Of a DNA stretch of 64,000 nucleotides, positions 44,271-51,329 are shown in pieces. This DNA comes from Selaginella moellendorffii (taxonomy: Eukaryota; Plantae; Lycopodiophyta). The translations under genes were made by a program, and so were the position numbers. The stretch is from contig NW_003314307.1 of assembly GCF_000143415.4 (NCBI RefSeq), positions 1,447,928 to 1,511,927 of the forward strand, in the 5' to 3' direction. The notes under the pieces are model-generated. The model made no database searches, had not been told where the DNA came from, and worked only from the letters and a program-made list of their open reading frames with translations. The number at the start of each line of letters is the position of its first letter. The first letter of the stretch is position 1.

Positions 44271-44334
44271 TTTAGGCGCGTTTAGGCGTTTAGGGTCAAA
44301 GACACCCCGTGGTGTTGCAATCCGGCGAGATCGC

Positions 44335-47300
44335 TGAACGTGTATGTACATTCCCCATGTCCCAATGGGACTAATACAAAAAATGGGCGTGCCGCCCTCT
44401 CCATGAGCTACTCTACGTGATCCTCATATGCCGCAGCTAGACCTAGTCCTGGAGTAGAAGTGGACGTGGTCGTCTCGAGCGAATCATGTCGATGTCCAAG
44501 TCTCCCCCACGAGCTGACCTTAGAACAGAGTCTGGGGGGCGCCATTGCCAGCGAATCTCGCCACCTCCCAATTTGCCGAAGCATGGGAGCCACCTAGATC
44601 TCCACTCCTTGAGCTGCCTCGGTTTCGCCCGCTCTTTCAGGATGGTGTAGTGAAGACGCACCGCTGCAAGAGTGAGTCTCCACCATGATGCCACCACTGC
44701 CGATATTCTCGCTTGTTGCCCATCAAAGCGACAGTGGTTCCGCGCCTCCCAAAGTGCCTGCAGTCCTGTTGCCCTCCAAATGGACCAGCGCTCTTGGCCC
44801 AACGCCTCCCAGATGGACATCCCAACTTCAGCCCCTGTCACGTCCCACCGGACTCGCATGTTCCATCGGTGCCGTCCGTAGCAGCGAATACGCCTCCAAG
44901 CTGGACCAATGGCTGGGCCTCTGGCTCCCTCAAACCAGTGGAGGATATCCCCACTCCGAGCCTCAAACTCTGGAATGTCTCCGAGTTCCTGCGTCGCCTT
45001 GAAGATCTGTCGCCAAACTTCTCTCGCCACGTCGCATTCCCATAGGACATGTTGCGCTGTCTCCAACTCGCCACACTCCTTGCACCGTCGGCATGCTTCT
45101 TCCTGGAACCGCTGTCCTACCGGCAGCCCGTTATTTGCCACCAACCAAGAGGTGGCCTTGACTTTCTCCTGTACCGGTAGTTTCCAGAACGCAAGCGTGT
45201 TGCCCACCACCTGATTTGCTTCAACTCCTTGCTCGATCCATTTCTTCCAGAGCTTGGGGATCTCCCCTCGGGCCTCCTCCCTGCTGGTCAAGAGACCATC
45301 CCTTGCTTCCTTGACGCCGAAGGAGAAGAAGCTCCTCGCTCCTCGTTTCCATGCTGCGGGGTCCCAATCCAGATCCTCGATGAGCTGCTGTCGCCACCAT
45401 CTAAGAATGCCTTCCCCTTCTAGTGCAGCCAACGATTGAACCACCACCGATTGTTTCGGAGCCTGTCGTATTACTCGAATCCTACCCTTGACCTCGTCAT
45501 CCGTCACCATCGGCATGACCTGTTCGTCCCCTGCTGGCAACAGCATGTCGCCTCTCAAGACTCGAAAAGGACGCCCAACATTTTGGTCTGGAGACACAAC
45601 GAACCATACCTCCACATCCCTGTCCTCCCAAGCTGGTGTTGGGGCCGTAAACGCCCGTGTCCAGGCCCCCAAGCTAACTCGTTCCCTGTCTGACTCCACG
45701 TCCCGTTGTAGAGCCACAAAGTCTCCAGATTTGAGACAACGCCTAGGCCAGAGCTGCCCCTGCTTCGCCTCACTCACTGCTCTGATAATGCGAAGAAGAT
45801 CAAGGTGGACTTTCCTCCACCGTCCCGGGTTAAAGACCTGCATATGTCTCGTAGTCTTCCTCCTGTCCTTGTCCAGAACCCGCACCAGCTGCTTGAGAGT
45901 TCGGAAGCCTGCGCTATGTAGCTTTCTCCAGATTGTGTAGTGGTCCTCCCTGCCCAGTGTCCTATCATCCAGTTTGAAGAGGTCGTTGAAGAACAGGGGC
46001 TGGTTCAGCCAGTCCTCCGCTCGCCCTGGCAATTCCCTACTGACTGGAAACGCGCTCCATAACCGGAGAAGCCCCTGGACTAGAGTGCCGCCCTTGACTA
46101 CTTGCTTCGGCCCCTCAGCAAAGAGCCAACGTGGATCTTCTTCCCACGGTCTTGCAGTGTTGTGCTTGGGCCGGATTGCCAACAAGTTCTGCCTAAACAT
46201 GAGTCTCCAAGGTTGATTACCTGGTTGAAGGCCCATGAGGAGGATTTTGTACCGTAGCGCCTTCGCCATGTCACTCGGATCGATTACTCCAAGTCCTCCC
46301 AAGACTCGCGGACGTGCTGTAGATTGCCACGCGACCTTGGCCATGCTCCTCCCTGTGACCAGAGCGCCCCGCCACAAATACTGACGGACCATCGTGCGTA
46401 CCTTTCTAAGAGTGCGTTCTGGAACAGGCCAGATGGAGAGGTGGTACCAGATGCCAGGCAGAATGATGCTCCTAGCGACTACCACTCTCGCTGGCAAGCC
46501 GAGTTTCCGGGGAGCCCACTTCTGGATTGACGTTCGTACCCGTCGGAGCAAGGTGTCATCCTGAAGTGCTGCACTGAACCGAGTACCAACCTGGATCCCC
46601 AGGTACCTAGCGTCTTCTCCTGGTTTGAGCCACTGGAAGCCAATGTCCTGCCCCCAAGATTCGATGCCTGGTCGCCCCCAATTTATGCCCACTGATTTGT
46701 TCCAGTTAATTGCTGCACCAGCCGCGAGGTTGAACGTCTCCAGCGCCTTCTTAGCTGCATCCATGTTCTCCTTAGTCGCAAGTAGGAACAAGGCAGTGTC
46801 GTCCGCAAAAGCACCATCAAGGAGTTCCCGAGACACCCTTGTGGTTCCCGGAAGTTGCTGTCTCGCAGCCGGCAGTGTGAGTCCTTTAATGCGTCCGCCT
46901 TCCGCTAGAAACGTGCCCAGGGCCTCAGCCACAATCAGAAAAAGATAGGGTGCTAGTGGACACCCTTGGCGTACTGAACGTCCCAGCTGGAAACTCGGTC
47001 CCGTCTCGCCATTGATTGTGACTCTGCTTGTGGCTCCTCGGTATAGTAACGAGATCCTAGTGACCATCTCTCTCGGGATGCCGATCGTGTTCATGCACTC
47101 CTCTAGGAACCTCCAGTCCACCCGATCGTAGGCCTTCTCGAAGTCCAAAAGCCATGCTGCAGTTTGTTGGTTAGAGATCTCTGCCCATCTCTGAGCCAGC
47201 AGGTACGTCCAGATGTTTTCTGCGATTTGCCGCCCTGGAACAAACCCTGTCTGCTGCTCCCGGATGATCAGCGGCATGACAGCTTGGAGCTTGAGGGTCA

Positions 47301-51185: not shown

Positions 51186-51286
51186 TCTCCGTGTGCCGTT
51201 GTCGAAACGGCGTGATCAAGAGCAAGTAGAGGAGGCAAGGGAATGAATTTTCATTCATTCGTGAGCGAGGGAGAGGACAAGAGACA

Positions 51287-51329
51287 ACCCGAGACCGGTT
51301 TCATCCTTTTTGGGACTCATCAGCCGGGT
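51287..51329 (-). ncRNA. Type I hammerhead ribozyme (helix II G-U variant)
   Basis: Minus strand ACCCGG-CUGAUGA-GUCCCAAAAAGGAU-GAAA-CCG-GUC^UCGGGU. Confidence 0.85.

What the first reader, a model, noticed from the sequence alone, without database searches (positions are those of the whole stretch)
44317..51329. L1/Tx1-like LINE inserted into the PLE 3' module just downstream of its ribozyme: possible hyperparasite
Seen: a LINE with intact ORF2 and an 18-bp TSD, co-oriented with the PLE. Its 5' junction (51143) is about 150 nt downstream of the predicted hammerhead cleavage site (51293/51292). It has no 5' UTR of its own, and ORF1 is open up to an ATG (51185) supplied by the host module. Known: Tx1-clade LINEs are often sequence-specific, including for other transposons, and R2 uses a ribozyme to release itself from a host co-transcript. 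Inference: this LINE may target the PLE head and borrow host transcription, the hammerhead for its 5' end, and a start codon. Caveats: one copy only; simple 5' truncation gives in-frame fusion one time in three; two other AUGs lie upstream in a hairpin.
Basis: partly seen in the sequence, partly recalled or inferred. Interest (0 to 1): 0.85.

Follow-up and report, generated by a model that had tools for sequence, protein, structure and literature searches.

The report
Site-specific LINE inside telomeric Penelope element
A young, front-truncated copy of a spikemoss jumping gene sits at the exact letter of a chromosome-end retroelement where its relatives have landed repeatedly, so the targeting is real, but nothing supports the idea that it borrows that element's ribozyme and start codon.

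Summary
A 6,809-bp APE/RT LINE (minus strand, 44335-51143) has intact ORFs and a perfect 18-bp target duplication. It lies co-oriented in the 3' tail of a hammerhead-bearing telomeric Penelope-like (PLE) module of Selaginella moellendorffii, 149 nt downstream of the ribozyme cleavage site. The targeting idea is supported. Three further insertions, each 5'-truncated at a different point, sit at the same nucleotide: two in other scaffolds and one in a read-derived contig. Three longer copies are stacked in tandem on the regenerated target. One long copy lies in an unrelated flank. The borrowing idea is not supported. Relatives carry about 1.4 kb more 5' sequence with their own conserved ATG, and the ORF1 frame continues upstream of this copy's end. 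A near-identical longer copy exists in another run. So this copy is simply 5'-truncated and the in-frame host ATG is best read as chance. No RNA-seq read crossed the junction or lay on the LINE; the reads came from uninterrupted modules. It is a sequence-specific L1-group LINE that parasitises another retroelement, and I found no published description. This scan has already flagged the same LINE-in-PLE system on at least six other pieces of this genome.

The parts
51287..51329 (-). Type I hammerhead ribozyme of the host PLE module; cleavage predicted between 51293 and 51292. This copy has a C-to-U change in helix II relative to its sisters.
   Evidence: Rfam RF00163, 35.6 bits; alignment with six sister modules; sequence read.
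51144..51161 (-). Upstream copy of the 18-bp target-site duplication; it is the end of the PLE module's left part.
51144..51185 (-). Host-derived leader of 14 codons, with an ATG at 51185 in frame with the truncated ORF1. I read this as a chance fusion.
44335..51143 (-). LINE body of 6,809 bp, 5'-truncated by about 1.4 kb relative to longer relatives. No poly(A) tail; the 3' end is ...CACGTTCA.
48945..51143 (-). C-terminal 733 codons of ORF1, with a CCHC knuckle at residue 566 of the 747-aa fusion frame. The stop codon TGA (48944-48942) overlaps the ORF2 ATG.
   Evidence: No Pfam hit.
44446..48945 (-). ORF2, 1,500 aa from its ATG. APE endonuclease about 48220-48927, RT about 46591-47388 (FADD motif), zf-RVT about 45013-45213.
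   Evidence: Pfam; motifs; closest solved structure is human L1 ORF2p, E 2.6e-47.
44335..44442 (-). 3' UTR of 108 nt with a small GUCCC/GGGAC hairpin.
   Evidence: The 3' end is conserved in L003, L005 and L002.
44317..44334 (-). Downstream copy of the 18-bp target-site duplication.
44211..44316 (-). Remainder of the PLE 3' tail and its terminal (CCCTAAA)n run. This is the proximal border of the terminal array.

Best explanation
This is a recent, 5'-truncated copy of a sequence-specific, poly(A)-less, APE-encoding L1-group LINE family of Selaginella moellendorffii. Full length is about 8.2 kb.

Shown: the family inserts repeatedly, in one orientation, at one nucleotide of the 3' tail of the telomere-associated hammerhead-bearing PLE module, and leaves a 17-18-bp duplication. 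That duplication coincides with the inner hairpin predicted in the PLE tail.

Inferred: the ORF2 endonuclease nicks the bottom strand at the left edge of the 18-mer. Reverse transcription is primed there, possibly aided by read-through RNA that pairs with the target. The top strand is cut 18 bp further on. Each insertion regenerates the site on both sides, which allows tandem stacking.

In this copy reverse transcription stopped about 1.4 kb short of the 5' end, inside ORF1. The in-frame ATG from the host module is an accident. The copy lacks its own 5' region and shows no sign of being transcribed from the PLE.
For: 1. Perfect 18-bp duplication and eight empty sites in the window.

2. Same-nucleotide 5' junctions with different truncation points:
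- this window, at LINE position 1;
- L003:6288|6289, at position 3329;
- L005:8928|8929, at position 6143 (L006 is probably the other haplotype);
- an X1 contig whose loose end at 51145 matches the LINE family at about position 6343 (matched at w44772-44801, 3 mismatches).
Sources.

3. The same LINE 3' end abuts the target in L003, L005 and L002.

4. Long copies begin 15-20 nt after a regenerated target in L003, L005 and L002.

5. Long copies share about 1.4 kb of extra 5' sequence at 84-90% identity. It has a conserved ACCATGG about 75 nt in, and in L003 an open frame of 305 codons upstream, in the same frame as this ORF1.

6. An X5 contig has 1 mismatch in 139 nt to this copy, then continues into that 5' extension. 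X5 depth falls from about 21 at the 3' side to about 5 at the 5' side.

7. dN/dS is 0.20-0.34 at dS 0.13-0.43 between this copy and the others. The family therefore diverged as active lineages, and copies diverged to dS 0.13 (L003-up) or 7% in nucleotides (L005-up) sit at the same target.

8. ORF2 has APE, RT and zf-RVT domains, and its closest solved relative is human L1 ORF2p.

9. RNA run X32 gave zero reads on 5.3 kb of LINE. Twelve reads run from the module into the uninterrupted tail, and all carry the letters of other module copies.
Against: - Only about five independent loci plus one contig were examined; this is not a genome-wide census.
- One long copy (L004) has a 5' flank with no similarity to the PLE, and a sister family (L007, 69% nt identity) is not in a PLE.
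- Endonuclease specificity is inferred, not assayed.
- The 3' ends of all long copies are lost in the loci fetched, so no full-length copy was seen with both junctions.
- Only about 12% of one RNA run was read, so absence of junction reads is weak evidence.
- X13, a run only guessed to be RNA, has low-depth contigs on the LINE body.
Confidence: 0.8

Rival explanations
1. The LINE has no 5' end of its own and functionally depends on the PLE: it is co-transcribed from the PLE promoter, the hammerhead creates its 5' end, and ORF1 is translated from the host ATG at 51185.
For: The LINE is co-oriented with the module, lies 149 nt downstream of the cleavage site, and has an open frame to a host ATG. 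ORF2 and the surviving part of ORF1 have no stops or frameshifts. PLE modules are transcribed, with about 10-fold more reads downstream of the hammerhead than upstream.
Against: Relatives have their own 1.4-kb 5' region and ATG, and ORF1 coding continues upstream of this copy's end. A near-identical longer copy exists. New copies carry no PLE leader. No RNA read crosses the junction, and all module reads carry variants of other copies. This module's hammerhead scores lower than its sisters. In-frame fusion is a 1-in-3 event over only 14 stop-free codons.
Confidence: 0.05
2. Hitchhiking or shared tail. LINE copies embedded between the hammerhead and the telomere-priming tail are transcribed as part of the PLE unit and carried to chromosome ends by the PLE reverse transcriptase. 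The LINE-bearing unit here would then have been added to the telomere as a composite, not hit in place.
For: The LINE-bearing unit is the most proximal unit of the terminal array and ends in the PLE tail plus (CCCTAAA)n, directly on unique DNA. The site lies upstream of the tail, so a composite RNA would keep the priming tail. An earlier scan note (s1-385016) read another locus this way.
Against: An exact 18-bp duplication is the mark of endonuclease-driven insertion into DNA. In L003 and L005 the downstream target copy is followed by another LINE, not by the tail. No second copy of this particular truncation junction was found. Hitchhiking would be additional to site-specific insertion, not an alternative to it.
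Confidence: 0.1
3. There is no specificity: an ordinary LINE landed by chance in an abundant subtelomeric repeat.
For: Only one copy lies in this window. One related long copy (L004) and a sister family (L007) lie outside PLE sequence.
Against: Four independent truncated copies share the junction to the nucleotide and the orientation. Three further long copies abut the regenerated target. Chance coincidence within a module of about 430 bp is of the order of 1e-8.
Confidence: 0.02

Closest known systems
Tx1L of Xenopus laevis (Tx1 clade), a LINE that inserts at one site inside the DNA transposon Tx1D
   Same: An APE-type LINE with ORF1 and ORF2 that is sequence-specific for another mobile element. 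It inserts in a fixed orientation with a defined target duplication. (From my own knowledge and the list of LINE targets in PMC4640811.)
   Different: The host here is a retroelement (a telomeric EN-deficient PLE module), not a DNA transposon. The organism is a lycophyte. The nearest named protein relatives are streptophyte LINEs at about 30% identity. Tx1-clade membership was not tested.
R1 and R2 (28S rDNA) and TRAS1/SART1 (Bombyx telomeric repeats), site-specific LINEs
   Same: Precise recurrent insertion into a multicopy target, frequent 5' truncation and tandem stacking. R1, TRAS and SART use an APE endonuclease. TRAS and SART also live at chromosome ends.
   Different: The target is a unique 18-mer hairpin in another retroelement's tail, not rDNA or the telomeric repeat itself. 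R2's co-transcription and ribozyme processing use its own ribozyme at the junction. Here the ribozyme belongs to the host element, lies 149 nt upstream, and leaves no mark on new copies.
Telomere-associated EN-deficient PLEs of S. moellendorffii with type I hammerheads (Gladyshev and Arkhipova 2007; Cervera and de la Pena 2014, PMC4209133)
   Same: The host module matches this description: a type I hammerhead, a 3' tail ending in reverse-complement telomeric repeats, and head-to-tail arrays at a scaffold end.
   Different: These papers describe the host, not the LINE. No PLE reverse transcriptase ORF was found in this window's units.
PLE-X (Chlamys-related) families of Selaginella that target one site in 28S rDNA (Craig et al. 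2021, PMC8557442)
   Same: The same genus and the same habit of nucleotide-precise targeting of a multicopy sequence. That paper called it the first such rDNA case from plants.
   Different: Those are PLEs without an identified endonuclease that target rDNA. This is an APE LINE that targets a PLE.
Human LINE-1 ORF2p (PDB 8sxt and others)
   Same: The closest solved relative by sequence (E 2.6e-47 over the RT region), with the same APE-RT-C-terminal cysteine-rich layout.
   Different: Human L1 has loose TTTT/A target preference and a poly(A) tail. This family has neither.

Membership tests
L1-group APE-type non-LTR retrotransposon | ORF2 with an N-terminal APE endonuclease followed by a reverse transcriptase | tested here: met
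   Exo_endo_phos 4.6e-14 and RVT_1 4.7e-26, both above Pfam cutoffs; FADD motif; best PDB match is human L1 ORF2p.
L1-group APE-type non-LTR retrotransposon | ORF1 upstream of ORF2, here with a CCHC knuckle as in many plant L1s | tested here: met
   ORF1 frame of 733 LINE codons with a CCHC motif. The ORF1 TGA overlaps the ORF2 ATG. No Pfam domain was found.
L1-group APE-type non-LTR retrotransposon | Poly(A) or A-rich 3' tail | tested here: not met
   The 3' end ...CACGTTCA abuts the target directly in the window, L003 and L005, and a diverged version of it does so in L002.
Tx1 clade | Phylogenetic placement of the RT/APE with Tx1 reference elements | not tested
   No labelled Tx1 references were available. 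Of 16 named top hits, 15 are streptophyte (Selaginella, Riccia, Chara, Closterium, Tanacetum) and one is a turtle, all except the Selaginella one at about 27-34% identity. This favours a plant L1-type lineage but is not a tree.
Sequence-specific (target-specific) LINE | Independent insertions at the same nucleotide, in the same orientation, with a constant target duplication | tested here: met
   Four distinct truncation junctions at one nucleotide, 17-18-bp duplications where both ends are seen, all co-oriented, plus three tandem stackings.
Sequence-specific (target-specific) LINE | Few or no copies outside the target | tested here: inconclusive
   One of four independent long copies (L004) has a 5' flank unrelated to the PLE. 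No genome-wide census was possible.
R2-like co-transcription with ribozyme-defined 5' end | A self-cleaving ribozyme at the 5' junction that defines the element RNA's 5' end | tested here: not met
   The only ribozyme is the host hammerhead 149 nt upstream. There is no Rfam hit in the LINE's own 5' 1.4 kb. Long copies carry no PLE leader.
R2-like co-transcription with ribozyme-defined 5' end | RNA that spans the host-element junction | tested here: not met
   Zero junction-spanning reads in X32 (about 12% of the run was read). Twelve reads continue into the uninterrupted tail instead. This is weak negative evidence.
Telomere-associated EN-deficient PLE (the host element) | Hammerhead motif, a 3' tail of reverse-complement telomeric repeats, and terminal head-to-tail arrays | tested here: met
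   Seven RF00163 hits on the minus strand. (CCCTAAA)n ends each unit. The window's right end is the scaffold end.
Telomere-associated EN-deficient PLE (the host element) | PLE/telomerase-like reverse transcriptase ORF | tested here: not met
   No RT domain in 12 minus-strand ORFs of 51.4-64 kb. The units here look non-autonomous or are tails only.

The most novel reading that the evidence does not exclude
The LINE family is a dedicated hyperparasite of the telomeric PLE. It homes to the PLE's 3' hairpin, and because it sits between the hammerhead and the telomere-priming tail, it is also co-transcribed with the PLE unit and carried to new chromosome ends by the PLE's own reverse transcriptase. 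That would give it two routes of spread.
Probability: 0.1. Interest if true: 0.85.

Novelty: new variant of a known kind. Interest (0 to 1): 0.55.

Why it matters
Sequence-specific LINEs are textbook cases in animals (R1, R2, Tx1, TRAS/SART). In my literature searches I found none described for plants, and none that targets a Penelope-like element.

Here an L1-group LINE has kept nucleotide-precise homing to another retroelement's 3' hairpin while its lineages diverged under purifying selection (dS between compared copies up to 0.43). This gives a natural pair for three questions: how APE endonucleases acquire long-site specificity, how one retroelement lives inside another at chromosome ends, and whether such nesting affects the telomere-healing activity of PLE units.

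This particular copy is the youngest seen, with a perfect duplication, an intact ORF2 and an unbroken remainder of ORF1. A run holds a near-identical longer copy. Together these point to recent or ongoing activity.

Tried and rejected
1. Whole-ORF2 and ORF2 C-terminal protein searches gave no close copies. Only the ORF1 N-terminal query found Selaginella gene models.
2. The exact-sequence look-up of the chimeric 747-aa ORF1 found nothing.
3. My impression that L004's 5' flank resembles the PLE tail did not hold: the local alignment score equals the shuffle mean.
4. I looked for a ribozyme of the LINE's own in the 5' 1.4 kb of L003 and L004. There was no Rfam hit at E up to 1 apart from one spurious lncRNA match.
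5. L007 (the P0047 locus) is a 69%-identical sister family fragment with no PLE nearby. It says nothing about this target.
6. Pfam found no domain in ORF1 or in any ORF of the PLE units.
7. Gladyshev and Arkhipova 2007 is not held in the library.
Contigs break at the repeat boundary, so no run confirms or denies the window's own 5' junction.

Full report
**Where the window lies**

The window is the last 64 kb of scaffold GL377611.1 of the Selaginella moellendorffii assembly GCA_000143415.2. Locus L001, fetched through a gene model on the LINE, is 100% identical over 7,809 nt. Its record coordinates place window base 64000 at the scaffold end.

From 44.2 kb to the end, the plus strand carries (TTTAGGG)n tracts alternating with units that read on the minus strand. 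There are seven Rfam type I hammerheads, all on the minus strand. Each unit ends in the same tail followed by (CCCTAAA)n. [quoted passage not shown] I found no PLE reverse transcriptase ORF in these units.

**The observation**

- The 18-mer GCGATCTCGCCGGATTGC occurs ten times on the minus strand, against 0.01 expected by chance. Two copies flank the LINE at 51144-51161 and 44317-44334.
- Aligning both junctions with six uninterrupted modules shows a clean insertion of 44335-51143.
- ORF2 is open for 1,506 codons and has Exo_endo_phos, RVT_1 and zf-RVT domains and a FADD motif. Its ATG overlaps the ORF1 stop as ATGA.
- The hammerhead next to the LINE is at 51287-51329. GUC cleavage falls at 51293/51292, which is 149 nt before the LINE.
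- The ORF1 frame is open from the first LINE base up to a host ATG at 51185.
- There is no poly(A) tail.

**Is the site targeted?**

A search with the first 300 LINE codons of ORF1 found six Selaginella gene models. I fetched their loci and compared them by blastn. Junction sequences were read.

| Source | What precedes the LINE | LINE part present | What follows |
|---|---|---|---|
| L003 (GL377602.1) | PLE module ending at 6288, the same nucleotide | From position 3329 of the window copy to its 3' end | 17-nt target copy |
| L005 (GL377587.1); L006 is probably the other haplotype | PLE module with its hammerhead, ending at 8928 | Last 667 nt | 18-nt target copy |
| Contig of run X1 | PLE module up to 51145 | Continues into sequence matching the LINE family about 470 nt from its 3' end, with 3 mismatches | Not seen |

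With the window this makes four different truncation points at one nucleotide, all in the same orientation.

In L003, L005 and L002 a long copy starts 15-20 nt after a regenerated target that follows a LINE 3' end. That is tandem stacking.

One long copy, in L004, has a 5' flank with no similarity to the PLE. Specificity is therefore strong but not absolute.

The 18-mer is the inner hairpin of a predicted nested stem-loop in the PLE tail. The support is modest, with z = -1.8.

**Is the 5' end borrowed?**

No.

- In L002-L006 the sequence upstream of the point where the window copy begins is conserved between copies.
- The long copies share about 1.4 kb of extra 5' sequence at 84-90% identity. 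It begins CCCTAATGTTGGA and has a conserved ACCATGG about 75 nt in.
- In L003 an open frame runs 305 codons upstream of the truncation point, in the same frame as the window's ORF1.
- A contig of run X5 matches the window copy with 1 mismatch in 139 nt up to 51143. It then continues into this 5' extension rather than into the PLE (compared).
- X5 depth falls from about 21 at the 3' side to about 5 at the 5' side, the usual LINE truncation gradient.

The in-frame ATG needs only a 1-in-3 frame match and 14 stop-free codons.

Long copies do not carry the 149-nt PLE leader that a hammerhead-defined 5' end would leave behind. Their own 5' region has no Rfam ribozyme.

**RNA evidence**

About 12% of RNA-seq run X32 was read. 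No read lay on the 5.3 kb of LINE and none crossed the junction. Twelve reads ran from the module into the uninterrupted tail. All module reads carried the letters of other module copies at 51218 and 51303.

Coverage was about 9.4 in the bin downstream of the hammerhead, against 0.8-1.8 in the bins upstream. This fits self-cleavage of PLE transcripts, but it rests on only 23 reads.

X13, a run only guessed to be RNA, has low-depth contigs on parts of the LINE. I draw no conclusion from that.

**Age and selection**

Between the window copy and the other copies, dS ranges from 0.13 to 0.43 and dN/dS from 0.20 to 0.34. The older copies carry 2-16 stops each. Most of the divergence therefore arose in active lineages. 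Copies at the same target have diverged to dS 0.13 (L003-up) or 7% in nucleotides (L005-up), so the target was kept over part of that span.

The window copy has a perfect duplication, an intact ORF2 and an unbroken remainder of ORF1. It is the youngest copy seen.

**Classification**

- The closest solved relative is human L1 ORF2p.
- The only close protein in 1.8 billion cluster representatives is a Selaginella sister family at 75% identity.
- Of the 16 named top hits, 15 are streptophyte and one is a turtle. Apart from the Selaginella one, all are at about 27-34% identity.
- I could not build a tree with Tx1 references, so 'L1 group, probably plant L1-type' is as far as the evidence goes.

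**Novelty**

Literature searches found the host PLE and its ribozymes, and Selaginella PLEs that target rDNA. They found no LINE that targets a PLE and no sequence-specific plant LINE. Repbase reports and subscription journals were not searchable.

Notes from this scan report the same LINE-in-PLE system on at least six other pieces of this genome. I used them as leads only; the recurrence claim was tested independently here.

**Verdict**

The targeting (hyperparasite) reading is supported. The borrowed transcription, ribozyme and ATG reading is not supported.

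Noticed in passing
window 51120-51700 (minus strand): RNA-seq reads from PLE modules are about 10-fold denser downstream of the hammerhead cleavage site than upstream, and they run into the telomere-priming tail. This fits in vivo self-cleavage with accumulation of the 3' product, but rests on only 23 reads.
   Followed up: partly
window 57380-57475 (minus strand) and sister modules: The 18-bp LINE target coincides exactly with the inner stem-loop of a nested hairpin predicted in the PLE 3' tail, just upstream of the (CCCTAAA)n run. 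The shuffle z-score is only -1.8.
   Followed up: partly
L003:6289-17189, L005:8929-15633, L002:2176-7248: Tandem stacks: a truncated LINE, then a regenerated target, then a long LINE. Between the target and the conserved LINE 5' start (CCCTAATG...) lie 15-20 variable nucleotides. L002 also has an inverted duplicate of the LINE 3' end, and an X1 contig shows a similar inverted joint at window 51196.
   Followed up: partly
L004:9949-15639: A long copy of the same family whose 5' flank has no similarity to the PLE. It is either an off-target insertion or a later rearrangement. Its 3' end is missing, so no duplication could be read.
   Followed up: partly
L007:9924-12707: A sister LINE family (75% aa and 69% nt identity; gene model XP_024517766.1) in a flank without PLE sequence. 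Its target is unknown.
   Followed up: partly
window 57217-57435 and 62922-63203: Extra target copies 201 and 264 nt from the next one belong to very short, 5'-truncated PLE units separated by telomeric repeats, not to LINE insertions. Units of many lengths share one 3' tail, as expected for telomere-primed reverse transcription.
   Followed up: partly
window 51303 (minus strand, hammerhead helix II): The hammerhead next to the LINE has a C-to-U change that turns a G-C pair into G-U. Its Rfam score is 35.6 bits against 40.5 for the six sister copies. No RNA read carried this variant.
   Followed up: partly
window 24464-26209 and 34866-35873: An intact PPR-repeat ORF and a protein kinase fragment lie 10-20 kb inside the terminal array, so ordinary genes sit close to this chromosome end.
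   Followed up: no
run X1 laid on window 45801-51700: X1 gives very short contigs (150-200 nt) with word depths in the thousands on the LINE and over 13,000 on the PLE module. This is unlike a normal shotgun run, and its nature is unknown.
   Followed up: no
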